Positions 1 through 24,181 of a stretch of 64,000 nucleotides of DNA are shown piece after piece. Position 1 is the first letter of the stretch. Every line of letters starts with the position of its first letter. The notes beneath the pieces were generated by a model. It was not told where the DNA came from. It saw nothing but the letters and a program-made list of their open reading frames with translations, and ran no database searches. The DNA comes from Cyanophora paradoxa CCMP329 (lineage: Eukaryota > Plantae > Glaucophyta): NCBI GenBank assembly GCA_004431415.1, contig QPMI01000039.1, forward strand, positions 620,001 through 684,000, given 5' to 3'. The position numbers were made by a program, and so were the translations under genes.

Positions 1-354
1 GCGGCATCTTCGTGAATGAGAACGGGCGGGGCACGGTCGAGGGCAACGACGTCTACGGCAACGCGCTGGCGGGCATCGAGATCCGGGAGGGCTCGGACCC
101 CGTCTTCAAGGGCAACCGGTGCGCCCTGGAGCTCCTCTGTGCCTAGTCCCTCCACATCTCCTCCGCCCCTGACACCCGCCCCCCGCAGGGTGCACGACCA
201 GAAGTACGGGATCTGCGTGCGAGACGGCGGCAAGGGCACCATTTCTGGGAACACGCTCGAGCGCATCTCGGACCCGTCCTACGCGCCCTGCAGCGGCGTG
301 AAGGTCCTCGACGGCTGCACCCCGGCCGTGCAGGGGAACACGTTCCGCCAGTAG
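1..354 (+). CDS. 3' end of beta-helix repeat gene A, copy 1 (N-terminal module lies outside the window)
   Basis: Reads GIFVNENGRGTVEGNDVYGNALAGIEIREGSDPVFKGNR, then GT-AG intron 119-188, then VHDQKYGICVRDGGKGTISGNTLER...QGNTFRQ* (stop 352-354). The last exon matches the last exon of copy 3 (24017-24181). Confidence 0.9.
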
Positions 355-4200: not shown

Positions 4201-6916
4201 GCTGACGCGCCCGCTCAGTCCGTGGCGACGGTGGGGCAGCTGAGCCGCCGCGGGAGCGGGACCGTCAGCCACGTGCGCCCGTCCCGCCCCTTGGACTCTT
4301 TCTCGCCTTATCCGATCGGGGCGCAGGTCTGGGCAGACGCGCTGCGGCACGCCCACGAGGGCGAGCGCGACTCGCCCGCCTCGGAGCGCTCCGCTGGGGC
4401 TGCCACGAGCCACCGCCGCCTCTCGCTCGCGGCGGCGGCACCGCAGCACCGCTCCTCCGCCCGCTTCGCCGCCGCTTCCCACGGGGAGGGCCCCGACGAC
4501 GAGGCGGCGGGGGGCGCGCGGCTCGCGCGCTCCCTCAGCGTCCGGCGGGACTCGGCGCGCGAGGGCCCTGCGCACTCCCCGCAGCGCCGGCCCTCCCTCG
4601 CCCCCGCCGACCCCGCCGCCCTCCCGCCGCGTGGGGCGAGCAGGGCGCGCCCCCCGTCGCCTGGGGCGCACCCGCCCCCGGCCCCGCCCTCGCCTCGGTG
4701 AGAGCGGTACCCCTCCGACGGCCGAGCGAGGCTGAGGCGCCTGTATCCCCGCAGAACTGGGGCCGCCGCCCTAGCGCCGACATGGCGCACGGCAGCCTTA
4801 CCGCCGCCGACTTCCACGTGCATTCTCCTGTACCCCCCGCCCCGCCCGCAGTCTATTTATAGCGCGCGGCAGGCGGCGCAGGCGGCGGCGATCGCGGCGA
4901 CGATGGCGGCCCTGGGCCTACCCCCCGGCGCCCCCCCCCCCTCCTGTCCCTCCCCGTACCCCTCCCCGTACCCTCCCCGTCCCCGGCGCCCCTCTTTCCG
5001 TCCCCGGCGCGCCCCTCCCCCTCCCCGGAGCCCTCCTACCAGCCCCCGTTTCCCCTCAGCATCCCCCTCCCGTACCCCCGTCCGCCTTCTCCCCCCACGC
5101 CGCCGTCTTCGACGCTGCAGCACAGGTACCCCCGCGCCCACTCTCCGATGCTGGGGCAGCCGCTGATCCGCCCGTACCCCCCAGGGACGGGTACACCAGC
5201 ACCGGCACTCGCTGCCGGACCCGTCCCTGCCGGCGCCGGCGGAGGACGCGCCCCAGGACCCCCAGGCCTTCGCCGCCCCTACCCCCGCGCCGGGCCGCGG
5301 GCTGCCCCCCGCCGACTTCTTCCAGCCCGGGACCACATCCTCCGTGCGCGTACCCCCCTCGGCCCCGGCGCCGGCCTCACCGCCCCCCTTCGCCGGTGCA
5401 GAAGCGGGTGCGGAAGCCGAGCCTGTCGGAGGACGGGAGCCCTGCGACGGCGTCGGCGGCGGCGGCGGCGCTGGCGGCGGTGGGGCACCCGCACCCCGTG
5501 CCCCGCATCCACACCCCGGGCTTCCGCTCGGGCTCCATCAGCATCCGCCCCCCGGTGCCCTGCTGTGCTGCTCGCGATGCCCGCCGGGGCGCCGGCGTCT
5601 GATTCGCCGCAGGAGGACCGCCGGGCGAGCAGCTCGTCGCAGGGGAGCGCGGGGGCGGAGGAGGAGGAGCAGAGGGGGCAGCGCGGAGGGGCCAAGGAGG
5701 CCGCCTCGCCCCCGCTGCACACGGCGCCGGCGCCGGCGCCGCCCGGGGCCGTGCCGTCGTCGTCGACGCTGTCGCCGCCAGCCTCGGGCTTCCCCACCGG
5801 CGCCGGCCTCTCGCAGCGCTCCGAGGGCGACACGTCGCGCCCCGCCACCGTGCGCCCCGAAGCCTCGAGGGCCGCTCGGGCGAGGACCTGAGGCGCCGCA
5901 GGGCCGGAGGCCGAGCATAAGCGCCGCGGGCAACGAGCAGCCGTCCTCCCGTCCCCCGAACGTGCGCGGCCTCGCACATGTACCCCCGCCCCGCCCCGAG
6001 CAGCGCCTGAGGCCGCCTTTGCGGGCCGCGCAGAGCCGGCGGCCGAGCGTGAGCGTCGCCGAGCCCGCCAAGGAGGAGCCGGTGAGCATCCTGAAGACAT
6101 CCAAGGTACTGTACCCCGGGGGCTGGGCTTCGGCACGGTACCCCCCTGACGCCCGGGGGTAGAGCTTCAAGGCGAAGTCGTTCCGGTCGCGCTCCGTCTC
6201 CATCGACCCCGCCGCCCTCCCCGTGCGCCCCGTACCCCCCTCGCTCCCCCCCCCCCTGTTTTCGAGCCCGCCCCGCGCAGAAGCTGGACGACGACGCGGC
6301 GGCGGCGGCGGGGGGCCCCGAGACGGGCCGCCTCAGCTCGCGCCGGGCCAGCATGCCGGCGGCCGGCGGGGCCGCGGACGGCGCGGGGGTACGGCCGCCG
6401 CGGCCAGCAGCCTCTGGATCCGGCGGGGAAGGAGCCCGAGCCCGCGCCGGTGCGCCCCGCGCCCCCGCCCCCCGTACCCCCCGCCGGGCCTGAGGTTGGA
6501 TCCGCAGGAGGCGGCGCCGGAGGGCCCGGACCCGGCGGTCTTCGCGGCGAGCCTCTCGCAGCGGCTGCGGGCGGCGGCGGGGGCGGCGGGGCGCTGGCCG
6601 AGGCGGGCGGGCGGCGGGCGGCCCCGGGGCGCTGCCGCTGCTCGCCCGCGTCGACGCCCACGCCGACGCCCGCGCCGCCGCCATGCAGCCGCCGCCGCCG
6701 CCGCCCCAGGCCGCCTCGTCCCTAGGCCTGCTCCCCTCCTCCCGCCGTCAGTCCTTCTCCCTCCCGCCCCCCCTGCCCATGATGTACCCCCTCCCGACCG
6801 CCGCGCCCATGGCGGTGCCGTACCCCGCGGCGCTCGCGGCGGGCTTCGTGCCGCCCCTGCCCCCGATGCCGCCGCCCCCCCAATTCCTCCCGCACGCGTA
6901 CGCCCCTCACGCGTAG
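1220..6916 (+). CDS. Gene B copy 1: helical (ARM-like) protein with long Ser/Arg/Pro-rich tail; internally rearranged, possibly a pseudogene
   Basis: Multi-exon paralog of 13988-19973 (MERAPSASVSPSDH..., IAFLKAELGNIKTLQGEIRRVIDDLSH, VEVMEKAYNLIACLAQ, ...QFLPHAYAPHA*). Carries a 33-bp triplication, an apparent frameshift near 1730 and a 256-bp two-exon deletion. Confidence 0.65.
1624..1720 (+). repeat. 33-bp coding tandem repeat x3 (VAQDGVHATAA)
   Basis: GTGGCGCAGGACGGCGTCCACGCCACCGCCGCC starts at 1624, 1657 and 1690; only a single VAQDGVH is present in copy 2. Confidence 0.9.
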
Positions 6917-8679
6917 TTGGCCATACAAGCGCTTGGCCGTGAGCAGCATGCTGAGTTTCCCTCTTTTCGAATCACTTTCTTTTCTCTACTAAAGTTATCC
7001 ATAGTAGTCATATTTTACACGCCGTGGCGCTATGAATTAGTGTACGTACTTAGCTTCGACGTTAACAAGTAATGCGTAATGTATGCAATAAAGTAACAGC
7101 TCTAGATCTAGATCTGGATTTCAATTTGAACAGACGACCACGGGCGGCTTGAAAGAACTGCATGCGCATGTGGATCAAATTACTCGAGAGAGAGACGAGA
7201 GAGACGAGAGAGACGCAAGATCGAGAGACGCTGCCGCGCGCCGCCGGGGCCCGGCCCCGAAGAACTCCGGGGCCCGGCTTGAACCCGGGGCCCCATCTCC
7301 GGGCGCCGGGGTCGGCGCAAGATCGAGAGGCGCCCGCGCGCGCCGCCGGCGCCCCAGGCGCCGGCCGCGGGCGCGGCCCCCGCGCGCCTGCCGCGAGCCG
7401 ACGCGGCCGGCGCCCCCTTAGGTCCCGCCCATCGAGTCGAGCTCGAGACCGGCCGGCCGCAGCCGCGCCCGCCCGTTCCGCAGCGCCCCCGCCCCGCCCC
7501 GCCCCCTCCTCTGAGGAGAGGATGAGCCCGGGGCCGGACCCGGCCGAGGGCGCGGAGGAGGAGGGGGCGGGGGCGCGCGGGCGCCGGCGCGGCCCCCGCG
7601 CTCCCCTCCGCCGGCCGGGGCGGTCCTGGGGCGGGCCTTCGGGGCAGAGGATCCGGAGGACGGAGTGGCGGGGGCCTGGCTCCACTGAATCGGCGCCGCC
7701 AGAGCGCGAGGGCGCGCGGCGGAGGCGCCGGCGCCGCGGAGGTCTCCGGGCCGTCCTGCCGCCCCGCGGGGAGGCCTAGGGGCGACCGCTGTTCTCCGCG
7801 CACGCGGCGCCGGCACCGATCGGCTTCACCTGCCGCCACGTCGCGACGGAACGCAGCGACGGCGCAACGACCCGTGCGCCTGCGCTGGAGGCGGCGGCCG
7901 GGGCCGAGACCCGAGGGCGGGGGCGAAGCCGGAATGGCGGAAGGGGGGGGGCTGGAAGGGCCGCCGCCCGCCGCCTGCGCCGCCGCCTGCGCCGCCCGCT
8001 CCGCTGAAGGCGGGCCCGGGGCGCGGGGTACGGGAGGGCGCACGCGCTCGGCCGGACCGCCGGGCCGGGCTCGGCCCCGCGCACCTGCGCCGCAGCGCCC
8101 CGAAGCGCGCGAGCGGGTGCGGTCCGACGCGGGACCGCGCATTGCCGCCGGCACGCCGATTCGGTGCGGGGCCCTCGGCAGCCGGCCGCGGCAGCTGAAG
8201 GCAACGCGGGCCTCTTCTCCCGGCTGGCGGGAGTGAGTCTGGCTGGCCATGGCCGGCCGCTGCAGCTGAGAGTGAGCCGCTGCGAGTCTGGCTGGCCGGC
8301 CGCGGCAGCTGAGAGTGCGCCGCCGGCTCTCGGACGCACCGATCGACCTCCAACTATGGAAGCTCGTCCTGGCGGCGAGCGCGCGGGGCCTGGAACGCGG
8401 CGGCGAGCGCGCGGGGCCTGCGCAGGGGCCGCAAAAGCCGCTTCGTCGCCCTCGGCTCCGGCCCGCGGCCGCGCGGCCATGGCCACCCTAGGCCCGGCCT
8501 GTGCGGCGGCGGTGGGTTGACAGCTCCGAAACGCGGCTAAACGTTGGCAGCTCCTCGAGCTGCCGCAGCGCGCCCGGCGGCCCGCGAACACTGCGCGGAG
8601 AAGGCCACTGCGCGGATCGGGCTGGGCTCGGCCTTCTGGGGGAGAGGCTGCGGCTACTGCGAGAATTGAAATCAACGCC

Positions 8680-8785
8680 GCAGCGCTGCGCGAGGCCTCC
8701 GATCCAGCCTCCAGCGGGCCGGCCCTCGGCTTGGACTCTGGCCACTTGGAGGCTTGAAGTCGCAGGGGGTAGAGGGCGGTTGCGG
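8680..8785 (+). repeat. Dispersed ~100-bp repeat (also at ~21055-21120 on + and ~31815-31902 on -)
   Basis: The motif CGCTGCGCGAGGCCT.CAGCGG...GCCCTCG.CTT.GA.TC....CTT.GAGGCTTG is present in all three places; the third copy is inverted and outside the duplication. Confidence 0.6.
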
Positions 8786-9167
8786 ATTGATCGCAACTGC
8801 CACGGCTCCCTGGGCCCTTCCACGCGGCGGAGGCGCGTGCGGCGGGTCATTCGAGCGCGGGTGCATCCGTACCGGTGCGCACAGCCGAGCGAATCACCAA
8901 GGCCGAAGTTTCATTAGCGTATTCATGTTTCGTGTTCTCTTTCCGGCAGAACGAACGAGCTTGGCTCTCCTCTAAGCGGCTGGCCGTCTTTGGCAGGCCG
9001 GGGCCGCCACGACCGAGATCCGGTCATCGGCCACCCCGCACACGCCTAGCTTCTTCTTGTGAAGGTGCAAGCGTCCCGTAAATTCGTCTAATTAGCGACT
9101 GCAGCTGACGCGTATGGGTTAGCTTGGCTTCCGATAGCCGGCGGCGGCGCCCTTGCAATCAAGCTCA

Positions 9168-12100
9168 ATGGACTTCCTCGGGACGCTGCAGGGCATCATC
9201 GACGTGCGCCCGCAGCTGCGCCGCTGATCATGATCATGATCACATGTACAGGCACTGATCAGATCCCCGTGCGCGGCGCCGCGGCCGGCAGGTTGCGCTG
9301 CGGATCAAGGAGCAGGCGGACGCCGCGAAGGCGAACCGCGCGAAGTGCTCCCGCCTCGCCCGCCGCGTGGCCGACCTCGCCCCGGCCCTGAAGCGTGCGC
9401 GCGCCGCGCGCCGCTGCCGCGGCCGTCTGGTCGACTTGGCTGACGCGCGCGCGCAGAGGTGAAGGCGCGGGGGGCGCCGAAGGCGGGGACGCGGGAGGCG
9501 GAGGCGGCGGAGGGGGCGGCGGGGAGCCTGCTGCAGGCGGCGCGGGAGGCGGAGGCGCTGGTGGCGAAGTTCGGCGGGCGCGGCTTCATGATGCGCTTCA
9601 TCAAGGCGGGGGACGACGCCGCGGCCTTCGAGGAGGCCCACTTCGCCATCGACCGCGCCTGCGCGACCCTCACCGCCTGCACCCTCGTCAAGGCCCGCAC
9701 CACCGCCGCCCGCTCCCTTCCTTAAGCTCCCTTGACGTGGCGGACGGGCCGGGCAGGTGGAGGCGGCGGCGGCGACGGCGGCGGAGCGGGCGGAGGACGA
9801 GCGGGAGGACCGGCGCGCCATGCAGAAGCTCCTCGCCGACTTCCAGGCCTCCTTCGGCGACTTCCGGTGCCCGGCCCCGCCTCCCCTGCCGCCCCGCCCC
9901 GCCGCGCCCCGCCCGAGCGGCGTCCCGGGCCGGGGGCGCAGGGAGGAGTACCGGCAGGACCAGCAGGAGCTGGTGGACGCGCTGCGCGGGCTGCGGCTGC
10001 AGGGGCAGACGACGGGCGACGGCGAGCTCCGGGGCCGCCTCGGCGCCATCGAGGGCCTCCTCCGCCAGCTCGCCGGTCCCGCCCGCGCCTTCTTCACGCT
10101 CCAAAGCCTTACGGCCTCGCAATCTGACGACCCCGCAGAGGGCCGCCCAGCGTCCGCGCCGCCGGCGCCGCCGCAGCGGCCCGTGCGCGTCTCGGGGGCG
10201 GTCGGGCCGAGCCTCATCCGCGACAGCGAGCTTCAGGCCCGCCCGGCGCCCCGGCGCCCCGGCGCGCCCACAAAGGCGGCGGCGGCGCCTCCTGACAGCC
10301 CGGCGCGCAGGTGCGGTGGAAGGAGCGGCCGCTGGGAGAGGGCGCCATGGGCCGCGTCTTCCGCGGCGACTGGCTCGGCCTTCCCGTCGCCGTCAAGAAG
10401 GCCCGCCCCGCCCCGCCGCATCGAGACGGGCGGCGCGCCGAGCGGGGCGGGGGCGGGGGCGTAGGTCACGGTGGGGATGAGCGAGGCGGCGCGGCGCGAG
10501 GTGGACCGCGAGTGCGCCGTGCACGCCGCCCTCCGCCACCCCAACATACTCCAGGCCCGCCCCCGCCCGCCCCCTCCCGCCCTCGTCCGCCGCGATTAGA
10601 TGCCGGCGCGGCGGCAGTTCTACGGGGCGTGCGTGCGGACGAGCGAGGAGGAGGAGGACAGCGTGCTGATCGTGACGGAGCTCGCCGAGGGGGGCACCCT
10701 CGCCGACCACGTCCGCTCGCCGGCCTTCCGGCGGCTGCCGCCGGCCGAGCGGGCGGCCCTCCTGCTCCCCGTCGCCCGCGCCCTCCAGTACATGGCCTCC
10801 CGCGCCAACCCCATCGCCCACGGTCCGCGCCGCCCGACCCCACGCGCGATGCGCTGCGGCCGAGCCTCGGGGGGGCGGCGGGGGCGCAGGGGACCTGAAG
10901 CCGGCGAACGTGCTGATGGTGGGGGCGGCCCCGAAGCTCGCCGACTTCGGCCTCTCGCGCCTGCGGGTGGAGACGCTGCGCTCCCGCACCTCCGTCGGGG
11001 GCACCCCCAACTACGGCCCCCCCGTGCGCCCCGCGGCACTCGCCTGCACCGCCCCGCCGCTCCGAGCACGGGCGCCCACGCCGGGCCGCGCAGGAGCTCT
11101 GGTCGCCGGGCTTCTTCCCGAGCGAGGCGGCCGACGTCTTTGCCTTCGGCTACCTCCTCTGGGTCCGCCCCGCCCCGGCCCGCCGCCGCCGGCTTCTCAG
11201 CTCCAGGCGGGGCGACAGGAGGCGCTGAGCGGGGAGGAGCCGTGGGCGGGCCTCCTCCCGCAGCAGGTCCTCAAGCTCGTCTGCCAGGAGCGCCGGCGGC
11301 CGGCCGTGGACGCTTCGTGGCCGCCCCCGCTGCGCGCCCTGCTCGCCGCCTGCTGGGAGGAGGATCCGGCCCGCCGCCCGCCGTTCGCCCGCGTCGTGCA
11401 GGCGCGTGGGAGGCGATCGCCGCCACTTGCAAGCCGCCGCAAGGGGGCGATGCATATGCGGGACTGATGCTGGGCGACAACGCTGCGCGCAGCTGCTGGC
11501 GGCAGCGACGGAGGAGCCGGCGCCGCGCCCGAGCCCCGCGGCCTCAAGCCCCCTTCCTGTGTGCCTTTGCCCCTTTGCTTGGCTCAGCAATCCCGCCCTG
11601 AGGCCCCGCAGGAGCTGAGCGTGCGGCCGGGGGAGAGCGTCGCGGCCGCCGTGGCGCGGGCCGCCCCGGGGCAGACCGTCCGCATCCAGCCCGGCCGGCG
11701 CGCCCCGTCCCCGGCCCCGAGCCGCGCCTCGGGCCGACCCGGCCCCGCAGGTACGAGGAGCAGCTGGTGCTGGACAAGGCGGTGCACGTCGTCGGGCCGC
11801 GGGAGGCCGTCCTCAAGTGGGACCAGGGCCCTGCCACAGTGCACTGCAAGGGCCCCGCGGCGCCGAGCGTCAAGGGCATCACGATCCGCAACACTGCGCC
11901 AAAGAAGTCTGCGGTGTGGATCACGGACGGGAGCCGGGCGGTCGTGGAGGGCTGCGACGTGTCCAGCGCGGGCCTCAACGGCATCGATGTCAAAGACGAG
12001 GGGACGGCCCCGACGCTGCGCGGTGGGCGCCCCGCCCCCGCCCCCTGCCCTCCGTTTGACCGATTCCGTGCTGCGCAGGGAACGCGGTGCACGACTGCGG

Positions 12101-13290
12101 CGGGGGGGGCATCGTCTTCCACACGTCGGCGAAGGGCGTCGCGGAGGGCAACGACGTCTACGGCAACGCGCTCTCGGGCATCGTGATCGAGACCGGCGCG
12201 GACCCCGTCGTGCGGGGCAACAAGGTCCACGACGGCAAGGAGGCCGGCATCCTCGTGTTCGAGAACGGGCGGGGCACGGTCGAGGGCAACGACGTCTACG
12301 GCAACGCGAAGTCGGGCATCCAGATCTCGATCGGCGCTGACCCCGTCGTGCGGGGCAACACGGTCCACGACGGCAAGGAGGGCGGCATCTTTGTGTACGA
12401 GAACGGGCGGGGCACGGTCGAGGGCAACGACGTCTACGGCAACGTGAGCACGGGCATCGCAATCAAGACCGGAGCGGACCCCGTCGTGCGGGGCAACAAG
12501 GTCCACGACGGCAAGGAGGCCGGCATCCTCGTGTTCGAGAACGGGCGGGGCACGGTCGAGGGCAACGACGTCTACGGCAACGCGAACTTGGGCATCGTGA
12601 TCCAGACCGGCGCTGACCCCGTCGTGCGGGGCAACAAGGTCCACGACGGCAAGGCGGGCGGCATCCTCGTGAATGAGAACGGGCGGGGCACAGTTGAGGG
12701 CAACGACGTCTACGGCAACGTGCAGCCCGGCATCGGGATCTCGACCGGCGCTGACCCCGTCGTGAAGGGCAACAAGGTCCACGACGGCAAGCAGGGCGGC
12801 ATCTTCGTGTGTGAGAACGGGCGGGGCACGGTCGAGGGCAACGACGTCTACGGCAACGCGTTCTCGGGCATCGAGATCAAGACCGGCGCGGACCCCGTCG
12901 TGCGGGGCAACAAGGTCCGCGACGGCAAGCTGGAAGGCATCTTTGTGTACGAGAACGGGCGGGGCACCGTCGAGGGCAACGACGTCTACGGCAATGCGCT
13001 GGCGGGCATCCAGATCAAGACCGGCGCGGACCCCGTCGTCAAGGGCAACCGGTGCGCCCTGGAGCTCCTCTGTGCCTAGTCCCTCCACATCTCCTCGGCC
13101 CCTGACACCCGCCCCCCGCAGGGTCCATGACCAGAAGTTGGGGATCGTCGTGCGAGACAGCGGCAAGGGGACCATCTCTGGGAACACGCTCGAGCGCATC
13201 TCGGACCCCGAGTTCGCAGTGAAGTGCAGCGGCGTCTGGGTACAGAGCGGCTGCACCCCGGTCGTGCAGGGGAACACTTTCCGCCAGTAG
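9168..13290 (+). CDS. Gene A copy 2: MLKL-like four-helix bundle + brace/coiled coil + TKL-type protein kinase + FBXO11-type right-handed beta-helix (~17 exons)
   Basis: Spliced N-terminus MDFLGTLQGIIDVALRIKEQADAAKANRAKCSRLARRVADLAPALKQV...AAREAEALVAKFGGRGFMMRFIKAGDDAAAFEEAHFAI. Kinase motifs LGEGAMGRVF, VAVKK, HPNILQFYG, HGDLKPANVL, DFG, GTPNYGPPE, DVFAFG, CWEEDPARRP. Then ELSVRPGESVAAAVARAAPGQTVRIQPGRYEEQLVLDK and ~7 46-aa repeats. Confidence 0.88.
12147..13050 (+). repeat. 138-bp (46-aa) intron-free coding repeat array, ~6.5 units
   Basis: Unit GNDVYGN-xxx-GIxIxxGADPVV(R/K)GN(K/T)VHDGK-xx-GIxVxENGRGTVE; scaffold DNA is nearly invariant between units. Confidence 0.95.
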
Positions 13291-13987
13291 CGCTAGCGCT
13301 CAAGTTTTGTACGCGAATTGATGAAGTCCTCCGGCCGCCGGCTCGAATCCAGGCAAGGCTGACTCGGAGAGAGCGAGCCCGATGCCAATCGCTATGGCGC
13401 GGATTGCGATCGACGTCGACGGCCGCGGACATGGCCGACGGATGGAGAGGAGCAAACTGCAATACGCGGAATCGGCGGGGCCGCGAACTCCAAGCCGCCA
13501 GCGCACCCGGCCGATGAGAAGAGTCGCCCGCGCCTCGACCTCCGAGCCCGGAGCCCCGCGGCAAGAGAGGACCGCAGCTTCGGTCATATTTACTATATAT
13601 TTGCTAGTTTGTCAAGCGAGAGGCACCGGTGGCGTACGCGTGGTCGCCTGGCCGCGCCGCGGCCGGTGGGAGTGGCCGGCCATGTGCTGGCGAGCTCCCG
13701 CGGGCAGTTTGAGCTCGGCGACGCATCCGATGGTGCCTATGCGCCACCCGGCCACTCCGCCCCGCGCGCCGCCCCGCGCGCGCCTTGGCCCCCAGCATGA
13801 CAAGATGGGCCGGGGTCAGTACTAGTCTGCTGCGGTGCTGGCGGCGGCATGCACCTGGCAAAGTCCACGATCATCGTGGGCATCGGCTCCCGCGGGCAGC
13901 TCGAGCTGGGCGACGCATCCGATGGTGCAATGTGCCGCCCCGCGCGCCGCCCCGCGCGCGCCTTGCATTGGCCCCTGTGCCGCTAAC

Positions 13988-16900
13988 ATGGCGCGCGCGC
14001 CCTCTGCCTCAGTGTCGCCGAGCGACCACGATGCGCGGAAAGAGAGCGCGCGGGGAGAGAAAGCCCCCGACGGCCCCGCCGCGAGCAAGTACAAGAGCCT
14101 CAGGAGGCGGCCCTCCTCGTGCGCTGCCCCGTAGTGCCCCGCCCCGCCCCCCCCCGCGCCGCGCCGCGCCGCGGCGGCCGACAAGCGCCCCGCGCCCCGC
14201 AGCATTGCGTTCCTGAAGGCTGAGCTCGGAAACATCAAGACGCTGCAGGGCGAGATCCGCCGCGTCATCGACGACCTGAGCCACGGTGCCTCGAGCTCGC
14301 GCGCGCGGGCGCGCGGGGCGTCGCAGCTAAAGCGACGCCGGGGTGGGGCGGGCAGACGCGGAGGGGGAGCGGGGCCTGGCGCTGGAGGTGGCGCAGGACG
14401 GCGTGCACGACATCGTCGCCGAGTCCCTCCTCACCCTCCGCGCCTCCGTGCGCCCCGCGCGCGTGCACTAAGCTGAGCGTGCTCGCCCCGCGCTGATCGG
14501 GGGCGGGGCAGGTGGACGCGCGCACGGCCGGCGACGCGTTTCGCGCCCTGCACATGATATGGAAGGGCGGGCGCAAGGTCCGGGCCCCGCCCTCCCCCCC
14601 CTCCCCCGCGCCCCCCGCGATGCGAGGCGTACCCCCCAGGGCGGGGCGGGTGCGATGTTCGAGAGGAACGAGGGGCTGCTGCCCTACGCGCGGGCCTCCC
14701 TCAAGGCCCCCTACGCCGGCCAGGTACCCCCCGCCCCCCCTCCCCCCCCGCGCCCCGCGATCGACCGCCTCCCCAGTACGCGCTGGCGCTGTTGGCGGAC
14801 GCGGCGACCTCCACCGCCCCAGGCGCGCCCCATCCCAACTGATTTGATCTCATCCGATCTGATCCAACCTCTCCGCGCAGTGGCGCAGCGGGTCTTCGAC
14901 CTGCTGGGCGGGGACGGCATGCTCGCCCTCTTCCAGATGGCCCGCGAGGCCTCCCGCGTGCGTCCGGCGGCGCTCGAACCCGCAGGGGGCCGCTTTCTTT
15001 CTCTCTGTCCTTAAGAGGCCGCCCGCAGGTGGAGGTGATGGAGAAGGCGTACAACCTCATCGCCTGCCTGGCCCAGGCGCTTGCTCTCCTCCCCTTGCTA
15101 CTCCGCCGCCGCCCCCCTCTCACAGCTTCCCGCCGCAGTGGCCGGCGCTGCGGGAGGCGTTCGCGGCGGGGGGCTACCACGCGATGGCCCTCGCCGACCT
15201 GCGCAACCCCATGCGCCAGAACAAATACGCGCGCCCCGTACCCCTCCCGCCCCGCCCCCTTCCCCGGGGCGCCCGCCTGACGCGCCCTGGCCCGCAGCGC
15301 CGCTCCCCCGCCCGCGTCCTCATGGGCCTCGCCCAGCACGGTCCGCTTCGCGTACCCCCCTCCGACCCCGCGTACCCCCTCCGATCCCCCCCCCCACCGC
15401 AGCGCCCATCCACGCGCGGCTCGCCGACGATCGCGCCCTCTCCGCCGCCGTCTCCCTCTCCATGTACCCCCCTCCCGCCCCGCCCCGCCCCTTCGCACCC
15501 CCCTGATCCTCCTCCCTCCCTCCCCCCCAAGGCACCCCGAGCAGGACCTGGTGGGGTACGGCCTCCGCGCGATGATCGGCTTCATGCAGGGGACGCGTGC
15601 GCCGCCTTCCCCCCCCTCCCACCCACCCCTCGTACCCCCTGACCCCCGCCCCCCTCCCCCCCGCAGCGTCGTTCCGGCAGAAGCTGGCGTGCGACATGGC
15701 GCACGTCGCCCGCCTCGCCGCCTCCCGCGACCGCGCCGAGGCCCACCTCGTCGCCCCGGGTACCCGAACCCCTTGGCCGGGGCCGGCCCGCCTCCTCCAG
15801 CGAGAGCTGACGCGGCATCGGCCCGCAGCGCTGCGGTGCGTGCGGCTGGCGGCGATGGACACGGGCGAGGTGGTGTCGCGCGACTGGATCGACCTCCAGA
15901 AGGAGCAGGAGGCAGCGATCCCGGGCCTCAAGGTGCGCGGCGGCGGGGGCTCTGGCCGCGCGGGGGCGGCGCGGTTCGGGGCGCCCGGCGCTCCGGATGC
16001 GCGGCGGGGCGCCTGATCCGATTCGATTCGATCTCATCTGATCCGATCTGAGCTCACCTGATCCGGTGCGCAGGAGCTGGGCCTCGCGGAGCAGTCCCTC
16101 CGCAAGGAGCTCGCGGCCCTCAACGGTGCGGTACCCCCCCAGGGGGGGGGGGAGGGCGGCTCTGAAGGGTCCCTCGCTCTCCCCCGCACGCAGGCGAGCG
16201 GGCGGTGGCGCGACTCTTCTCCGACAGCGACCGCATCTACTCCATGATCCAGGCGAGCGAGCAGGCGACCGTTCCTCCGCCCCGTTCTCCCGCCCCCTCA
16301 CGCCTGCGCCGCAGATCGTGGTGGGGGTGGGCCCCGCGTGGGCCGACGAGGGGGACGAGGCCCTCGCCTCGGGCGGCCGCTGGGCCCCCGTGCGCCCGCC
16401 CCGCCGCCCCGCCCCGCGCGGGATCGAATCCGACTGCTCGGGCGGCCGCTGACGCGCGGGGCGGGCGCAGGCCGCCGACGCGACGTACCTCCTCGCGACC
16501 GTCACCGCCCTCGGCGCGCCCCGCCCGCCCTCCCCCCCTCCCAGGCCCCCGCCCTCTCCTGAGAGCGCCCCGCCCGCCCCCCGCCCCGCCGGCCCCGCAG
16601 ACGCCGGCCTGAAGCTGCTGCTCCGGAACACCACCGCCTGCTCCATGGTCCAGGTGCCTTTTCGAAGGGGCGGGCGGCTCGCCCCGCGCCCACCTCACGC
16701 CCCGCCACAGGCGGCGTGCGCCTCGGAGCTGGAGCCGCTGCGGGAGCGCTGCATCGCGGCGACGCGCTGCATCGAGCGCGGCGTGGCCGCCGCCTTCGCC
16801 GACCCCGACCCCTCCGCCGACGCCTCCGCCACCGAGGTGGCCCCGCCCCGCCCGCTGCCTTCGCCCCGCGTTCCGCGCCTCACGCGCGGGCGGCGCCGCC

Positions 16901-19900
16901 TCAGGTGAAGCCGATCGAGGCGGGGGCCCCCGAGAACATCCGCAGCGTCGACAGCGACGAGCTCGAGGCGCGCCCTTCAGAGTCTCCTCTGTCTTTGTCT
17001 CTCGCGGCGTCTTACGCTCTGATCTTCTTTGCAGGCGCGGCGCGCGGCGTCGATGCGGCGGCGCTCGATGACGGGCGCCAGCGGGCGGCGCGGGAGCCTC
17101 ACCGGCGCCGGCGGGAGCGCCGGCCCCGGGCCGAGCGCCATACCCCCCTGGGTCGCGGGCCCCGGCGCCGGCCTCAGCAGCGTCGACTCGAAGGACTCGC
17201 TCGCCACCGTCACGTCGGCGCACGTGCGTACCCCCCTCCCCGCCCCCGCCCGGGGCCGCGCTGACGCGCCCGCTCAGTCCGTGGCGACGGTGGGGCAGCT
17301 GAGCCGCCGCGGGAGCGGGACCGTCAGCCACGTGCGCCCGTCCCGCCCCTTGGACTCTTTCTCGCCTTATCCGATCGGGGCGCAGGTCTGGGCAGACGCG
17401 CTGCGGCACGCCCACGAGGGCGAGCGCGACTCGCCCGCCTCGGAGCGCTCCGCCGGGGCTGCGCATGCCACGAGCCACCGCCGCCTCTCGCTCGCCGCGG
17501 CGGCCCCCCAGCACCGCTCCTCGGCCCGCTTCGCCGCCGCCGCGCCCCACGGGGATGTCCCGGACGAGGAGGCGGCGGGGGGCGCGCGGCTCGCCCGCTC
17601 CCTCAGCGTCCGGCGGGACTCGGCGCGAGAGGGCCCCGCGCACTCCCCGCAGCGCCGCCCCTCCCTCGCCCCCGCCGACCCCGCCGCCCTTCCCGCCGCG
17701 TGGGGCGAGCAGGGCGCGCCCCCCGTCGCCTGGAGCGCCCCCGCCCCCGGCCCCGCCCTCGCCTCGGTGAGAGCGGTACACCCCCCCGCGGCCGGGCGGG
17801 GCTGAGGCGCCTGTACCCCCGCAGAACTGGGGCCGCCGCCCCAGCGCCGACATGGCGCACGGCAGCCTTACCGCCGCCGACTTCCACGTGCATTCCCCTG
17901 TACCCCCCGCCCCGCCCGCAGTCTATTTATAGCTCGCGGCAGGCGGCGCAGGCGGCGGCGATCGCGGCGACGATGGCGGCCCTGGGCCTACCCCCTGGTG
18001 CCCCCCTCCCCCTCCTGGCCCTCCCCGTACCCCTCCCCGTCACCGGCGCCCCTCTTTCCGTCCCCGGCGCGCCCCTCCCCCTCCCCGGGGCCCCCCTACC
18101 AGCTCCCGTGTCCCCTCAGCATCCCCCTCCCGTACCCCCGTCCGCCTTCTCCCCCCACGCCGCCGTCTTCGACGCGGGAGCACAGGTACCCCCGCGCCCA
18201 CTCTTTGATGCTGGGGCAACCGCTGATCCGCCAGTACCCCCCAGGGACGGGTACACCAGCACCGCCACTCGCTGCCGGACCCGTCCATACCGGCGCCGGC
18301 GGAGGACGCGCCCCAGGACCCCCAGGCCTTCGCCGCCCCTACCCCCGCGCCGGGCCGCGGGCTGCCCCCCGCCGACTTCTTCCAGCCCGGGACCACCTCC
18401 TCCGTGCGCGTGCCCCCCTCGGCCCCGGCGCCGGCCTCACGGCCGCCCTGCGGCGGCGCAGAAGCGGGTGCGGAAGGCGAGCCTGTCGGAGGACGGGAGC
18501 CCTGCTACGGCGTCGGCGGCGGCGGCGGCGCTGGCGGCGATGGGGCACCCGCACCCCGTGCCCCGCATCCACACCCCGGGCTTCCGCTCGGGCTCGATCA
18601 GCATCCACCCGCCGGTGCTTTGCCTTGCCTTGCCTTGCTGCTCGCGATGCCCGCCGGGGCGCCGGCGTCTGATTCGCCGCAGGAGGACCGCCGGGCGAGC
18701 AGCTCGTCGCAGGGGAGCGCGGGGGCGGAGGAGGAGGAGCAGAGGGGGCAGCGCGGAGGGGCTAAGGAGGCCGCCTCGCCCCCGCTGCACACGGCGCCGG
18801 CGCCGGCGCCGCCCGGGGCCGTGCCGTCGTCGTCGACGCTGTCGCCGCCAGCCTCGGGCTTCCCCACCGGCGCCGGCCTCTCGCAGCGCTCCGAGGGCGA
18901 CACGTCGCGCCCCGCCACCGTGCGCCCCGAAGCCTCGAGGGCCGCTCGGGCGAGGACCTGAGGCGCCGCAGGGCCGGAGGCCGAGCATAAGCGCCGCGGG
19001 CAACGAGCAGCCGTCCTCCCGTCCCCCGACCGTGCGCGCCTTCGCACCTGTGCCCGCGCCCCGCCCCGAGCAGCGCCTGAGGCCGCCTTTGCGGGCCCCG
19101 CAGAGCCGGCGGCCGAGCGTGAGCGTCGCCGAGCCCGCCAAGGAGGAGCCTGTGAGCATCCTGAAGACGTCCAAGGTACTGTACCCCCGCTGAGCTTCGG
19201 CACGGTACCCCCCTGACGCCCGGGGGTAGAGCTTCAAGGCGAAGTCGTTCCGCTCGCGCTCCGTCTCTATCGACCCCGCCGCCCTCCCCGTGCGCCCCGT
19301 ACCCCCCTCGCTCCCCCCCCCTCGTATTTAGAGCCCGGCCCGTCCAGAAGCTGGACGACGACGCGGCGGCGGCGGCGGCGGGCCCCGAGACGGGCCGCCT
19401 CAGCTCGCGCCGGGCCAGCGTGCCGGCGGCCGGCGGGGCCGCGGACGGCGCGGGGGTACGGCCGCCGCGGCCAGCAGCCTCTGGATCCGGCGGGAAAGGA
19501 CCCCGAGCCCGCGCCGGTGCGCCCCGCACCCCCGCCCCCTGTACCCCCTACCGGGCCTGAGGTTCGATCCGCAGGAGGCGGCGCCGGAGGGCCCGGACCC
19601 GGCGGTCTTCGCGGCGAGCCTCTCGCAGCGGCTGCGGGCGGCGGCGGGGGGCGGCGGGGCGCTGGCGGAGGCGGGCGGGGCGGCGGGGCCCCGGGGCCCT
19701 CCCGCTGCTCGCCCGCGTCGCCGCCCACGCCGACGCCCGCGCCGCCGCCATGCCGCCGCCGCCGCCCCCGCCCCAGGCCGCCCCCCCCTGCTCCCTCCTC
19801 CCGCCGCCAGTCCTTCTCCCTCCCGCCCCCCTGCCCATCGTGTACCCCTCCCGACCGCCGCGCCCGTGGCGGTGCCGTACCCCGCGGCGCTCGCGGCGGG

Positions 19901-19973
19901 CTTCGTGCCGCCCCTGCCCCCGATGCCGCCGCCCCCCCAATTCCTCCCGCACGCGTACGCCCCTCACGCGTAG
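13988..19973 (+). CDS. Gene B copy 2: alpha-helical (ARM/HEAT-like) N-terminal region plus long disordered C-terminal tail, function unknown
   Basis: Exons splice in frame: ...HDAEGERGLALEVAQDGVHDIVAESLLTLRAS|VDARTAGDAFRALHMIWKGGRK|GGAGAMFERNEGLLPYARASLKAPYAGQ|YALALLADAATSTAP..RVFDLLGGDGMLALFQMAREASR|VEVMEKAYNLIACLAQ|WPALREAFAAGGYH...DLVGYGLRAMIGF. The ARM assignment is by pattern only. A few frame slips occur in G/C runs near the 3' end. Confidence 0.7.
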
Positions 19974-21672
19974 ACGGCCACACAAGCGCTTGGCCGTGAG
20001 CAGCATGCGGAGCTCTCTCTCTTATTACATTACTTTCTCTCATCTACTCCTCTACTAAAGTTAGCCATAGTAGTCATGTTTTACACGCCGTGGCGCTATG
20101 AATTAGTATACGTACTTAGCTTCGACGTTAACAAGTAATGCGTATACGTAATGTATGCATGCGCAATTTTAACAGTTACAGCTTTAGATCTGGATTACTT
20201 TCAACAGGGCTACCTGTTTTGCGACTTCATTCGACGGGGTCTGGTGAGGGCGGGCGCCGGGCGGGAGGGCGGGCGCCGGGCCCCGGGCCCCTCTCCGGGC
20301 TCCGGGCTCGGCGCTCGTGCGCCGCCGGCGCCCCGGGCGCCTATCATAGTGCGACGACGGGTTACGCAGGCGGCCCCTGGCCGAGGGCGGGGAACCTGGC
20401 CGAGGTCGGGGGCAGGACCTGGCCGAGGGCGGGGGAGGAGGAGGGGCGGGGGGGCGCCGGCGCCGGCGCGGCCCGCGCGCTCCCCTCCGCCGGCCCGCGC
20501 CGGTCCCGGGGCGGGCCTCCGGGGCAGAGGATGACGGGGAGGCGGGGGCCGGCGCCGGCGAGCGCGGCGCCGGCTCCACTGAAGCGGCGCCGCGCATGCG
20601 CAAGGTCGGCGGAGGCGCCGGCGCCGCTGAGGCCTCCGGGCTGTCCTGCCGCCGCGCCGGGAGGCCTGGGGACAGCGGCTGTTCTCCGCGCACGCGGCGC
20701 CGGCACCGATCGACTTCACCTGCCGCCCCGTCGCGACGGAACGCAGCGGCGGCGCAACGGCGCGCGGCGGCGAGGGCGCGGCGGCACGCGGCGGGACTCG
20801 GGCGAGCGGCAGCGGATGGCGCGGGGCCTGCGCGGAGCCGGAGACCGCGTCGTCGCCCGCGGTTAGCGCGGCGGCGCTGCGCGGTGGAGGACCCTCCGGA
20901 AAGAATCAAACGGACGCACCGATCGTCCTCCATGCCAGCTCCCGCCTCGCGCCCGGCAGCAGCGCGGCGAGCGCCGGTCCCTCTCATGAGAGGAGTCGCT
21001 GGAGTGTGCGGGGGACGAGCACTCTGCGCATACAGCGGGGAAGTTTCAACGCCGCGGCGCTGCGCGAGGCCTACAGCGGGGCTTGCCCTCGCCTTGGATT
21101 CTAACCTTAGAGGCTTGGACAGCCTAGGACGTCGACTATTACATCTCTTAGCTTGTATAGAGCCGCAAGCGGCGGCGGCGGCAGGGGCCAGGGCCAGGCT
21201 AATGGCAGGCTTGGAAGGGGGGGTAGAGGGCGGTTGGGTCGCGACTGCGTCAGCACATCGAGAGGCACACGCGGCGGAGGCGCGCTCGGCGGATCATTAG
21301 AGCACGGGCGGAACCGTACTGGTGCGCGCAGCGCGAATCACCGGGGCCGAAGTTTCATTAGCCTTTTCATGTTTCGTGTTGCTCTTTCCGGCTGAGCGAA
21401 CGAGCTTGGCTCTCCTCTAAGCGGGTAGTTTCCTTTGGCAGGCCGGGGCCGCCACGACCGAGGTCCGGTCATCGGCCGCCCGGCACGCGCGCGCCTATAG
21501 CTAGCTATCCCAATTTGCAACCGTTTAGCTGCTAGCGCTTAGGCCGACAGCTGCAGCTGCTCATGATCATAGACTCTCTTCGGAAGTTCCCCTTCAAGGC
21601 TTCGCCTAGCGCCGTTACCCATGCGCGGCGCGGGTGTGTGCGCAGCGCTGGCGGCGGCCCGCGGCCGGGGCG

Positions 21673-24181
21673 ATGGCGGCGGAGAGCTATGACCTCTTCC
21701 TCTCCCACAAGCAGAGCACGGGCGGCGACCTCGCCGGCCGCATCAAATCCGAGGTCCGCCCCCGTCGCCCGCCCGGCCCGCCCGCCCGGCCGGTTCGAGC
21801 TCCGCGGGCGCAGCTGGAGGTGCTGCGGCCGGGGATCCGCGTCTTCATCGACGTGGACGCTCTGGGCGACATCCACGACCTCGCGGCCGTCATCCGCAGC
21901 ACCCGCTGCTTCGTCCTCATCATCACGCCCGGTGCGCCGCGCGCGCCCGCACCAAAGAGAGCTCGATTCATGATCATCGCCCGCCGCTGCTTATATAATT
22001 ACGCGCGCTCGCTCGCGCCGCAGAGTGGCTGGAGAGCCTGTTCGTCCTGCGGGAGCTTGCCACCGCCGTCCGCGCGCAGCGCCGCATCCTCATCGTCTGG
22101 GACCGCGACCGGCTCCCCAACTTCCCCCAGAGTGCCCCCGCCCCCCAGCCGCTCTCCCGGCGGCCGCCGGGCTGTTAACGTTAAGGCGGCTGCAGTCGAC
22201 TCGCGGACGGTGCTGCCACGCATCGACGAGATGGGCGACGCCGAGCTGCGGGGGACCCTGCAGCGCGTCCTCATGATCAAGGCCCGCCTCGCTCGCCCCG
22301 CCGGCCCCGCTGCGCCCGGCGCGAGGGGCGGCGCAGGCGATTCCGTACATCCGGGAGAAGGCTTTCCGGGAGACGGCGCTGCGGGAGATCCTCCAGCGCT
22401 TCGACGCCGCCCAGCCCTTCCGCATGGACGCCGCCCCGGCCCCCGCCCCGGCCCCCGCCCCCATCAACCACGGCGCTGCGGCTGTGGTGCGCCGCGCGCG
22501 CCGCCGCTCAGCGGCTGCGGCTGCGCGGCGAAGTGACGCGGGGCGGCAGGCGGCGGACATGGCGCGCCTCTCCGTCTCCGTCCGCCCCCCCACCCCCCGC
22601 CCGCCCCGCCCTGCCGGCCCTGAGGCCCCGTAGGAGCTGAGCGTGCGGTCGGGGGAGAGCGTCGCGGCCGCCGTGGCGCGGGCCGCCCCAGGGCAGACAA
22701 TCCGCGTTCAGCCCGGCCGGTGCACATGCGTCCCTTCCCCGGCCCAGAGCGGCCCCTCGGACCGACCCGGCGCCGCAGGTACAAGGAGCAGCTGGTGCTG
22801 GACAAGGCGGTGCACGTCGTCGGGCCGCGGGAGGCCGTCCTCGAGTGGGACCAGAGCCCCACGCTGCACTGCAAAGGGCCTGTGGCGCCGAGCGTCAAGG
22901 GCATCACGATCCGGAACACGGGGCCGAAGAATGGGACACTGTGGATCACGGGCGGGAGCCAGGCGGTCGTGGAGGGCTGCGATGTGTCCAGCGCCGGCAT
23001 GAACGGCATCGAAGTCAAAGACGACGGGACGGCCCCGACGCTGCGCGGTGGGCGCCCCGGCCCACCCCCGCCCCCTGCCCTCCGTTTGACCGATTCCGCG
23101 ATGCGCAGGGAACGCGGTGCACGACTGCGGCGGGGCGGGCATCTTCTTCTACACGTCGGCAAAGGGCGTCGCGGAGGGCAACGACGTCTACGGCAACGCG
23201 AACTCGGGCATCCAGATCAGTGAGGGCGCGGACCCCGTCGTGAAGGGCAACAAGGTCCACGACGGCAAGGCGGCCGGCATGTACGTGCTGGAGAACGGGC
23301 GGGGCACGGTCGAGGGCAACGACGTCTACGGCAACGCGAACTCGGGCATCGCAATCAAGACCGGCGCGGACCCCGTCGTGCGGGGCAACAAGGTCCACGA
23401 CGGCAAGCAGGGCGGCATCCTCGTGTACGAGAACGGGCGGGGCACGGTCGAGGGCAACGACGTCTACGGCAACGCGAAGTCGGGCATCCAGATCTCGATC
23501 GGCGCTGACCCCGTCGTGCGGGGCAACACGGTCCACGACGGCAAGGCGGGCGGCATCCTCGTGAATGAGAACGGGCGGGGCACAGTTGAGGGCAACGACG
23601 TCTACGGCAACGTGCAGCCCGGCATCGGGATCTCGACCGGCGCTGACCCCGTCGTGAAGGGCAACAAGGTCCACGACGGCAAGCAGGGCGGCATCTTCGT
23701 GTGTGAGAACGGGCGGGGCACGGTCGAGGGCAACGACGTCTACGGCAACGCGTTCTCGGGCATCGAGATCAAGACCGGCGCGGACCCCGTCGTGCGGGGC
23801 AACAAGGTCCGCGACGGCAAGCTGGAAGGCATCTTTGTGTACGAGAACGGGCGGGGCACCGTCGAGGGCAACGACGTCTACGGCAATGCGCTGGCGGGCA
23901 TCCAGATCAGGGAGGGCGCGGACCCCGTCGTGCGGGGCAACCGGTGCGCCCGCGAGCTCCTCTGTGCCTATAATCCCCCCGCATCTCCTCCGCCCCTGAC
24001 ACCCGCCCCCCGCAGGGTGCACGACCAGAAGTACGGGATCTGCGTGCGAGACGGCGGCAAGGGCACCATTTCTGGGAACACGCTCGAGCGCATCTCGGAC
24101 CCGTCCTACGCGCCCTGCAGCGGCGTGAAGGTCCTCGACGGCTGCACCCCGGCCGTGCAGGGGAACACGTTCCGCCAGTAG
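21673..24181 (+). CDS. Gene A copy 3: SARM1-like TIR domain + FBXO11-type right-handed beta-helix
   Basis: Spliced MAAESYDLFLSHKQSTGGDLAGRIKSE|LEVLRPGIRVFIDVDALGDIHDLAAVIRSTRCFVLIITP|EWLESLFVLRELATAVRAQRRILIVWD...KAIPYIREKAFRETALREILQRF. A Pro/Ala linker follows, then ELSVRSGESVAAAVARAAPGQTIRVQPGRYKEQLVLDK and ~6 repeats. Confidence 0.9.
23177..23942 (+). repeat. 138-bp (46-aa) intron-free coding repeat array, ~5.5 units
   Basis: Same scaffold as 12147-13050; several units are identical to units of that array. Confidence 0.95.

What the first reader, a model, noticed from the sequence alone, without database searches (positions are those of the whole stretch)
12147..13050. Repeat units with an invariant scaffold and fixed hypervariable codons (a possible recognition code)
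Seen: variation is almost confined to two windows per unit. After GN: ALS-V-ET, AKS-Q-SI, VST-A-KT, ANL-V-QT, VQP-G-ST, AFS-E-KT, ALA-Q-KT. After GK: EA-L-F, EG-F-Y, EA-L-F, AG-L-N, QG-F-C, LE-F-Y. Scaffold DNA such as GAGAACGGGCGGGGCACGGTCGAGGGCAACGACGTCTACGGCAACG is almost invariant even at synonymous sites. Variable residues alternate with conserved I/V, so they should face outward. Established: fungal NLR WD40 repeats and LRR/VLR receptors show this same signature. Inference: concerted evolution plus diversifying selection on one binding face.
Basis: partly seen in the sequence, partly recalled or inferred. Interest (0 to 1): 0.87.

Follow-up and report, generated by a model that had tools for sequence, protein, structure and literature searches.

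The report
Variable beta-helix sensor in an alga
In the alga Cyanophora paradoxa, a repeat-built beta-helix keeps its frame fixed while about four residues per turn on its binding groove change fast, and it is fused to cell-death or immune-type enzymes, so it looks like an undescribed, shuffling immune sensor whose ligand is unknown.

Summary
Observation confirmed. The 138-bp units (12144-13039) encode paired 23-aa coils of an FBXO11-type right-handed beta-helix. It ends a spliced, transcribed, intact 1017-aa gene (MLKL-like head, kinase, beta-helix). A neighbouring copy carries a TIR head and shares an identical 380-bp tract, showing gene conversion and unit shuffling. 86% of amino-acid changes fall on 10 of 46 codons: positions 10, 11, 14, 16 and 17 of each coil. 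These form the usual binding groove: position 14 aligns with AlgG D317, and in FBXO11 orthologues they are the most conserved positions. Positive selection is supported moderately: M8 omega 2.5-6, M8 vs M8a p 0.005 or lower, relaxed-constraint simulation p about 0.05 or lower. With GC3 at 0.96 and recombination, local hypermutation is not excluded. The same pattern occurs in prokaryotic TIR-beta-helix proteins. It works like fungal WD40 NLR sensors but has no NOD domain. No ligand, one-unit-one-target code or killing is shown. I found no paper describing it. The scan noted this family earlier on other DNA of this genome.

The parts
12144..13039 (+). Array of 6.5 x 138-bp units = 13 coils (7 a-type, 6 b-type) of a right-handed parallel beta-helix; variable codons 10, 11, 14, 16, (17) of each 23-aa coil
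9168..13290 (+). Gene A: 17 exons, 1017 aa, one stop; MLKL-like head, kinase, linker, beta-helix
   Evidence: model; RNA contig offsets fit at 9 checked points and both RNA contigs end at 11657 as the model predicts
9168..10075 (+). MLKL-like N-terminal helical head and brace-like coiled region (exons 1-5)
   Evidence: Pfam MLKL_N on single exons, E 0.003 and 0.007, below the curated cut-off
10311..11401 (+). Protein kinase domain with VAVK lysine, HGDLK (non-RD) catalytic loop and DFG retained
11559..11611 (+). Phase-0 intron separating the exchangeable head from the shared beta-helix exons
   Evidence: RNA contig length arithmetic
11612..12143 (+). Non-repetitive N-terminal cap and first coils of the beta-helix (exons 14, 15 and start of 16)
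12638..13017 (+). 380-bp tract identical to 23530-23909 of gene B (gene conversion or recent exchange)
   Evidence: short-read contigs starting at 12638 have about 1.7 times the depth of single-copy contigs, suggestive only
13122..13290 (+). Last exon: C-terminal cap of the beta-helix
   Evidence: exact DNA contigs
8765..9045 (+). Upstream block shared with gene B (21219-21490, 82%)
21673..24181 (+). Gene B: 10 exons, 642 aa, one stop; TIR head (catalytic-position Glu kept) and the same beta-helix; splice model inferred from sequence only
23174..23941 (+). Gene B array, 5.6 units; unit 3 joins A2 (a-coil) to A4 (b-coil); units 4-5 identical to A5-A6
1..354 (+). 3' end of a third copy (gene C): last intron 98.6% like A, last exon 100% like B

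Best explanation
The array is the variable ligand-binding domain of a one-piece intracellular non-self receptor. SHOWN: each 23-aa coil has a fixed core and presents positions 10, 11, 14, 16 and 17; units are homogenised and reshuffled by gene conversion and unequal exchange within and between tandem paralogues; the same domain is joined to unrelated signalling or killing heads (MLKL-like plus kinase, TIR, SAM-TIR-ARM, lipase, RING). STRONGLY INFERRED: the variable positions stack into the loop-strand-loop groove that beta-helices use for binding, and selection favours new residues there. INFERRED ONLY: the ligand is foreign or altered-self, most likely an extended protein segment as for FBXO11, possibly a glycan; binding releases or clusters the head, so that the kinase activates the MLKL-like bundle (gene A) or the TIR domain cleaves NAD+ (gene B). 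Specificity would be combinatorial across stacked coils, not a one-unit-one-target cipher.
For: Fold: Pfam Beta_helix E 5e-76; model pLDDT 84.5 with three strands per coil, the long strand covering positions 11-17; best structural matches are beta-helical tailspikes and glycan enzymes, Z 29-34. Face: position b14 aligns with the residue mutated in AlgG D317A; in four FBXO11 orthologues these positions are 82-92% identical between species against 59-77% for the rest. Selection: M8 omega 2.5-6.3, M8 vs M8a p = 0.005, 0.0005 and 1e-8 under three frequency models, with a10, a11, a14, a16, b10, b16 at posterior 0.95 or more in all three. Conversion simulations: a relaxed face gives the observed count in 6 of 132 (GC3-biased) and 0 of 82 (unbiased) runs, while omega 3-5 reproduces both the non-synonymous and the synonymous counts. 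Shuffling. Family: Cyanophora copies form one clade (support 98-99) with diverse heads; across paralogues the same positions hold the highest entropy, 2-3.3 bits in both coil types except b17. Independent replicate: 16 of 61 metagenomic genes have homogenised arrays varying at the same positions, pN at the face above pS at the face in 12 of 16 (p=0.005); 41 of 47 carry a TIR domain.
Against: No ligand, no functional test and no strain-to-strain data. A model with a free rate for the face codons fits better than omega>1 at equal parameter number (lnL -489.4 vs -492.4), and a 3-fold hypermutable neutral face also fits the counts under GC3 bias. M2a vs M1a is borderline (2dL 5.9, 2 df). Recombination and multi-base codon changes inflate site tests. 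Pooled prokaryotic omega at the face is only 1.3-1.7, or about 1 (0.6-1.2) with a free rate. Prokaryotic homologues mostly sit among housekeeping genes; only about 6-7 of 99 neighbours hit defence models. The TIR share among them is inflated because the search seeds were mostly TIR proteins. MLKL_N hits are below the Pfam cut-off.
Confidence: 0.6

Rival explanations
1. Neutral or mutational origin: a recently expanded array whose core is under purifying selection and conversion, while the exposed groove codons are unconstrained and mutate faster or escape homogenisation. No selection for new specificities.
For: Apparent dS at face codons is 3-4 times the scaffold's; the free-rate model with omega 0.7-1 fits best; the hypermutable simulation fits under GC3 bias; prokaryotic pooled omega near 1 with free rate.
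Against: Pure relaxation is disfavoured. Raised apparent dS is also produced by positive selection in the simulations. Codons 12, 13 and 15, which lie between the variable codons, show no synonymous change in 25 coils, so a hot spot would have to be codon-specific. The same positions are the conserved functional surface in FBXO11.
Confidence: 0.17
2. Fixed-specificity adaptor: the coils diverged quickly after duplication to fit an endogenous partner and are then conserved, as in FBXO11 and as described generally for young protein repeats (PMC5120217). The protein would be a signalling kinase with a docking domain, not a non-self sensor.
For: The closest characterised relative, FBXO11, uses its CASH domains for substrate recognition (PMC8825234) and has a fixed pattern; fast horizontal then slow vertical evolution is common (PMC5120217).
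Against: Ongoing exchange between genes with unrelated heads would scramble a fixed code; the heads are recurrently immune or death-type; unit number differs widely among paralogues.
Confidence: 0.13
3. Carbohydrate-binding or carbohydrate-active module, for example for cytosolic glucans or plastid-wall peptidoglycan, with variation tuning sugar preference.
For: All close solved structures are glycan-binding or glycan-processing beta-helices; aromatic residues are common at b14 and b16.
Against: The catalytic D-P-H-D motif of AlgG is absent and those positions vary from coil to coil; a shared fold shows no function; the sequence family is that of FBXO11 and TIR fusions. A foreign glycan ligand would still fall under the best explanation.
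Confidence: 0.07
4. Directed mutagenesis by a diversity-generating retroelement, or an assembly artefact that mixed paralogues.
For: Fixed variable codons in a constant frame recall DGR targets; identical tracts can arise from consensus errors.
Against: Variable columns include C/G, C/T and G/T changes and many adenines, including all Asn-ladder AAC first and second positions, are invariant; no non-coding template copy in the window. Short-read contigs match the shared tract exactly and begin at its boundary.
Confidence: 0.03

Closest known systems
Fungal NLRs with high internal repeat conservation (Podospora HET-D/HET-E WD40; ANK and TPR types; PMC1805685, PMC4986451)
   Same: Near-identical repeats exchanged within and between paralogues; about four positions per repeat under positive selection on the interaction surface; different N-terminal effectors on one sensor type
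   Different: Scaffold is a right-handed beta-helix, a repeat type not reported in those papers; no NACHT/NB-ARC switch, the effector is fused directly; glaucophyte alga; function untested
FBXO11 (F-box, three CASH domains, UBR box; PMC8825234)
   Same: Same 23+23-aa double coil and the same groove positions; CASH domains serve substrate recognition
   Different: No F-box or UBR box; FBXO11 coils are only 44-49% alike and each is conserved across species, whereas here coils are about 82% alike and the groove is the variable part
Prokaryotic TIR-, caspase-, kinase- and Hsp70-beta-helix proteins (often labelled 'F-box protein 11' in IMG)
   Same: Effector plus the same beta-helix; homogenised arrays with the same variable positions in about a quarter of sampled genes
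   Different: No description found in the literature searched; separate branch from the Cyanophora clade, relation unresolved; weaker selection signal
MLKL / RIPK3-MLKL necroptosis and plant or fungal MLKL-like proteins (own knowledge)
   Same: Helical-bundle head, brace-like region, kinase-fold domain
   Different: Kinase keeps its catalytic motifs; a variable sensor is appended; head match is weak
Lamprey VLR and plant LRR receptors (own knowledge)
   Same: Solenoid with a variable beta-sheet face on a constant frame
   Different: Different fold; no cassette-based somatic assembly shown; intracellular
AlgG/AlgE epimerases and phage tailspikes
   Same: Fold, and the groove position of the variable residues
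   Different: No catalytic motif; highly regular coils

Membership tests
Fungal-type NLR with highly conserved repeats | Central NACHT or NB-ARC nucleotide-binding domain | tested here: not met
   The full models of genes A and B have no room or motif for one: head, (kinase), short linker, beta-helix
Fungal-type NLR with highly conserved repeats | N-terminal effector domain | tested here: met
   Kinase and weak MLKL_N hits in A; TIR in B, exon by exon
Fungal-type NLR with highly conserved repeats | Internal repeat identity of at least 85% over at least 100 aa (PMC4986451) | tested here: met
   Just met: best 100-aa windows 86 and 85 at shifts of two and three units; mean 81-83%
Fungal-type NLR with highly conserved repeats | Concerted evolution within and between loci | tested here: met
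Fungal-type NLR with highly conserved repeats | Positive selection at a few positions per repeat | tested here: inconclusive
   M8 vs M8a significant in three models, relaxed null disfavoured, but the free-rate model fits with omega near 1
Fungal-type NLR with highly conserved repeats | Variable positions cluster on the interaction surface | tested here: met
   Indirect; coordinates not inspected
Fungal-type NLR with highly conserved repeats | Repeat-number polymorphism among strains and non-self recognition activity | not testable with these tools
   Only fragmented short-read contigs were available
FBXO11 | CASH/PbH1 double-coil beta-helix | tested here: met
FBXO11 | F-box and UBR box | tested here: not met
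   Absent from the models of genes A and B; not every exon was scanned with Pfam
FBXO11 | Each coil distinct and conserved across species | tested here: not met
   Coils are homogenised and shuffled between paralogues
MLKL | N-terminal four-helix bundle | tested here: inconclusive
   MLKL_N E 0.003 and 0.007 on two colinear exons, below cut-off; not folded
MLKL | Catalytically dead pseudokinase | tested here: not met
   Lys of VAVK, Asp of HGDLK and DFG are present
MLKL | Membrane permeabilisation on activation | not testable with these tools
   needs an experiment
Diversity-generating retroelement target | Variation restricted to template adenines | tested here: not met
Diversity-generating retroelement target | Non-coding template repeat nearby | tested here: not met
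   Self-comparison of the window finds only coding copies
Diversity-generating retroelement target | Reverse transcriptase gene | not tested
   The window and genome were not scanned for one
AlgG/AlgE-type beta-helix enzymes | Catalytic D-P-H-D motif | tested here: not met
   The aligned positions are hydrophobic or variable
TALE-like cipher | One repeat specifies one ligand element | not testable with these tools
   No ligand known

The most novel reading that the evidence does not exclude
A previously undescribed class of NOD-less innate immune receptors, shared in design by bacteria and a glaucophyte alga, in which an FBXO11-type beta-helix is a rapidly reshuffled, hypervariable sensor wired directly to interchangeable TIR, caspase, lipase or MLKL-kinase effectors, with specificity set modularly by stacked coils.
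Probability: 0.35. Interest if true: 0.85.

Novelty: new variant of a known kind. Interest (0 to 1): 0.68.

Why it matters
Hypervariable, concertedly evolving sensors are documented for WD40, ANK, TPR and LRR repeats, mostly behind a NOD switch. A beta-helix doing the same job without a NOD would add a new receptor scaffold. It would give an early-branching relative of plants a variable immune repertoire, and explain a large unannotated set of prokaryotic TIR-beta-helix proteins. It also suggests that FBXO11's substrate surface is a frozen form of the same groove. The regular 23-aa coil with four or five free positions makes ligand and specificity directly testable, and is of interest as a natural binder scaffold.

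Tried and rejected
DGR-type mutagenesis: rejected on base spectrum and lack of a template. Codon bias as the sole cause of synonymous invariance: rejected using prokaryotic genes with lower GC3, but kept as a contributor. Assembly artefact for the shared tract: not supported. Enzyme like AlgG: motif absent. Origin from FBXO11 or by transfer from bacteria: the cap-region tree (162 columns) does not resolve it. Defence-island context for prokaryotic homologues: weak. Scans with a broad alignment failed for lack of a conserved stretch; the genome scan with the exon gave only three distant loci. Within-culture or between-strain variation: could not be read from contigs, where other letters come from paralogues. 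Literature: no paper links Cyanophora with TIR/NLR immunity or MLKL, or this beta-helix with TIR/caspase sensing. Kaur et al. 2020 (PMC7159879) does not mention beta-helices. The 'Beta-Helix sensor' of Menshen (PMC12065111) is a sheet followed by a helix, not this fold. No held paper gave AlgG residue roles, so the catalytic role of D317 rests on the PDB entry title and my own knowledge.

Full report
What is there. The stretch is a perfect-register tandem array of 138-bp units, 6.5 copies at 88% identity with no indels. Each unit encodes 46 residues made of two 23-residue coils, here called a and b. Pfam gives Beta_helix at E 5e-76. A single-sequence AlphaFold model has pLDDT 84.5 and three strands per coil. 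Structural searches return only right-handed beta-helices, Z up to 34 over all 323 residues. In both coil types the variable codons are 10, 11, 14 and 16, plus 17 in a-coils. In gene A these 10 of 46 codon columns hold 27.5 of 32 minimum non-synonymous changes.

Organism and gene. The closest proteins are EukProt entries of Cyanophora paradoxa; these are paralogues, and the scan's notes name the same species. The array lies in exon 16 of a 17-exon gene (9168-13290) that gives 1017 residues with one stop. Two probable RNA runs hold contigs that match five exons exactly and skip the introns. Nine checked offsets fit the model, and both contigs end at 11657, inside the first beta-helix exon, exactly where the DNA contig ends because gene B shares that sequence. 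The kinase-to-beta-helix splice is thus supported by length arithmetic, not by a single read through the array. The head has weak MLKL_N matches and the kinase keeps its catalytic motifs with a non-RD loop. A second gene 11 kb downstream (21673-24181, 642 residues, model from sequence only) has the same upstream block and beta-helix but a TIR head. The 3' end of a third copy is at 1-354.

Concerted evolution and shuffling are shown. Genes A and B are 82-89% alike in the cap exon, introns and last exon yet share 380 identical bases inside the array. Unit 3 of B joins the a-coil of A2 to the b-coil of A4, and A1 and A3 have identical b-coils. Gene C has A's last intron and B's last exon. Short-read contigs that start at the boundary of the shared tract have about 1.7 times single-copy depth, which is suggestive support that the tract is real.

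The variable positions are the binding face: three indirect lines. First, the model's long strand covers positions 11-17 with the alternating I/V pointing inward, and positions 10-11 lie in the loop before it; by established beta-helix anatomy this strand and its two flanking loops form the ligand groove (own knowledge). Second, position b14 aligns with the residue changed in the AlgG D317A structure, and b16 with the histidine two residues on. Third, FBXO11 has the same double coil, and between four animal orthologues positions 10, 11, 14, 16 and 17 are 82-92% identical against 59-77% for the rest, while coils within one protein are only 44-49% alike. FBXO11's CASH domains serve substrate recognition (PMC8825234). 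So the surface that is frozen in FBXO11 is the one that varies here. I could not read the model's coordinates.

Selection: supported, with limits. Counting gives dN/dS 1.7-2.8 at the face and 0.2-0.3 elsewhere, but apparent dS is also higher at face codons and GC3 is 0.96. My own implementation of codon site models on 11 distinct a-coils and 8 distinct b-coils gives face omega 2.0 against 1 (2dL 5.0-5.6), M2a against M1a 2dL 5.9, and M8 omega 2.5-6.3 with M8 against M8a p = 0.005 to 1e-8 (branch lengths scaled, not re-fitted). A model in which face codons simply evolve about three times faster with omega 1 fits better than the fixed omega>1 model. Forward simulations with gene conversion show that a merely relaxed face reaches the observed count in 6 of 132 runs (GC3-biased) or 0 of 82 (unbiased); that omega 3-5 reproduces both counts, including the raised apparent dS; and that a threefold hypermutable face also fits under GC3 bias. 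Codons 12, 13 and 15, between the variable ones, show no synonymous change, which argues against a regional hot spot. The face positions were first read from these same sequences; the prokaryotic genes, the other paralogues and FBXO11 single out the same positions independently. I put diversifying selection at roughly two to one over a mutational cause.

The family. At least 18 Cyanophora beta-helix proteins form one clade on the cap region (support 98-99). Their heads include TIR, SAM-TIR-ARM, class-3 lipase, RING/Sina zinc fingers and kinase. Outside this alga, the 56 top representatives examined include 12 with a kinase, 10 TIR, 9 caspase, 2 CHAT and 5 true FBXO11. Among metagenomic loci, 41 of 47 have a TIR domain, a share inflated by my seeds. 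Sixteen of 61 distinct genes have DNA-homogenised arrays, with non-synonymous differences peaking at positions 9-11, 14, 16 and 17 of both coils while synonymous differences are nearly flat. Their pooled omega is 1.3-1.7, or about 1 with a free rate; the face's non-synonymous rate exceeds the scaffold's synonymous rate by 1.1-1.8 fold. Their neighbours are mostly housekeeping genes; one lies beside a double-GTPase and a CHAT gene. The tree does not say whether the algal family came from FBXO11 or from bacteria.

How it most likely works. A cytosolic one-piece receptor: the groove binds a foreign or altered-self molecule, most likely an extended protein segment, and this releases or clusters the head (kinase and MLKL-like bundle in A, TIR in B). 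New specificities arise by point change at four or five codons per coil, spread and recombined by conversion and unequal exchange, while heads are exchanged at a phase-0 intron. Repeat turnover and head exchange are shown in the sequence; groove location and selection are well inferred; ligand, activation and killing are conjecture. No evidence supports a one-unit-one-target code.

Comparison with what is known. It works like the WD40, ANK and TPR sensors of fungal NLRs (PMC1805685, PMC4986451) but is not an NLR, since the NOD domain is missing. It is not FBXO11, not a DGR target and not an AlgG-type enzyme. I found no paper on beta-helix sensors of this kind or on such receptors in Cyanophora, within a library that lacks most subscription journals. 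Verdict: new variant of a known kind, interest 0.68. The scan had noted the family on other pieces of this genome and on this stretch; those notes were leads only.

Method notes. All database and family searches used single exons by reference; the joined models were not sent to any search tool, so no full-length search or fold of gene A or B was made. Joined models were built inside scripts to check reading frames and codon usage. One script ran a local comparison of the joined cap region with proteins already fetched, whose output was not used, and the tree used joined cap regions of A and B.

Noticed in passing
window 48567-49445, minus strand: 141-bp tandem repeat, 6.2 copies at 94%, in which each unit appears to be one short exon for a cysteine-rich metallothionein-like peptide plus one intron; variation is mostly in the intron part.
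   Followed up: partly
window 60378-61492: 130-bp tandem repeat, 8.5 copies at 92%, period not a multiple of three; no coding sense evident.
   Followed up: no
window 882-7133 and 13694-20207, partial third copy 24685-25216: A duplicated multi-kilobase block (94% over 5.4 kb) lies between the beta-helix genes; it seems to hold an intron-rich gene, but ten mechanical ORFs gave no Pfam match.
   Followed up: partly
window 9168-13290: Six of 16 introns in gene A and one of nine in gene B have GC donors; all are 53-92 bases long.
   Followed up: yes
window 12144-13039: Five of the seven synonymous scaffold variants end in A or T in a gene with GC3 0.96, as expected of young mutations not yet removed by GC-biased conversion or selection.
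   Followed up: no
L007 406-12643: A TPR plus beta-helix protein with 16 coils sits directly after a DO-GTPase2 gene and near a CHAT gene, the setting of double-GTPase conflict systems.
   Followed up: no
proteins P0121, P0127, P0114/P0115 (Cyanophora) and P0136 (bacterial): Other heads on the same beta-helix: two class-3 lipase domains flanking the array, SAM-TIR-ARM, RING-Sina zinc fingers, and an Hsp70 domain.
   Followed up: partly
L001 6001-7641: Rhodobacter protein with a caspase-like N-terminus by motif and a DNA-homogenised array varying at the same positions; it may be secreted, with an OmpA-domain gene nearby.
   Followed up: partly
metagenomic proteins P0013, P0124, P0133, P0138, P0158: Labelled 'F-box protein 11' by their source; P0013 has a TIR domain and no F-box, so the label may hide this family in annotations.
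   Followed up: partly
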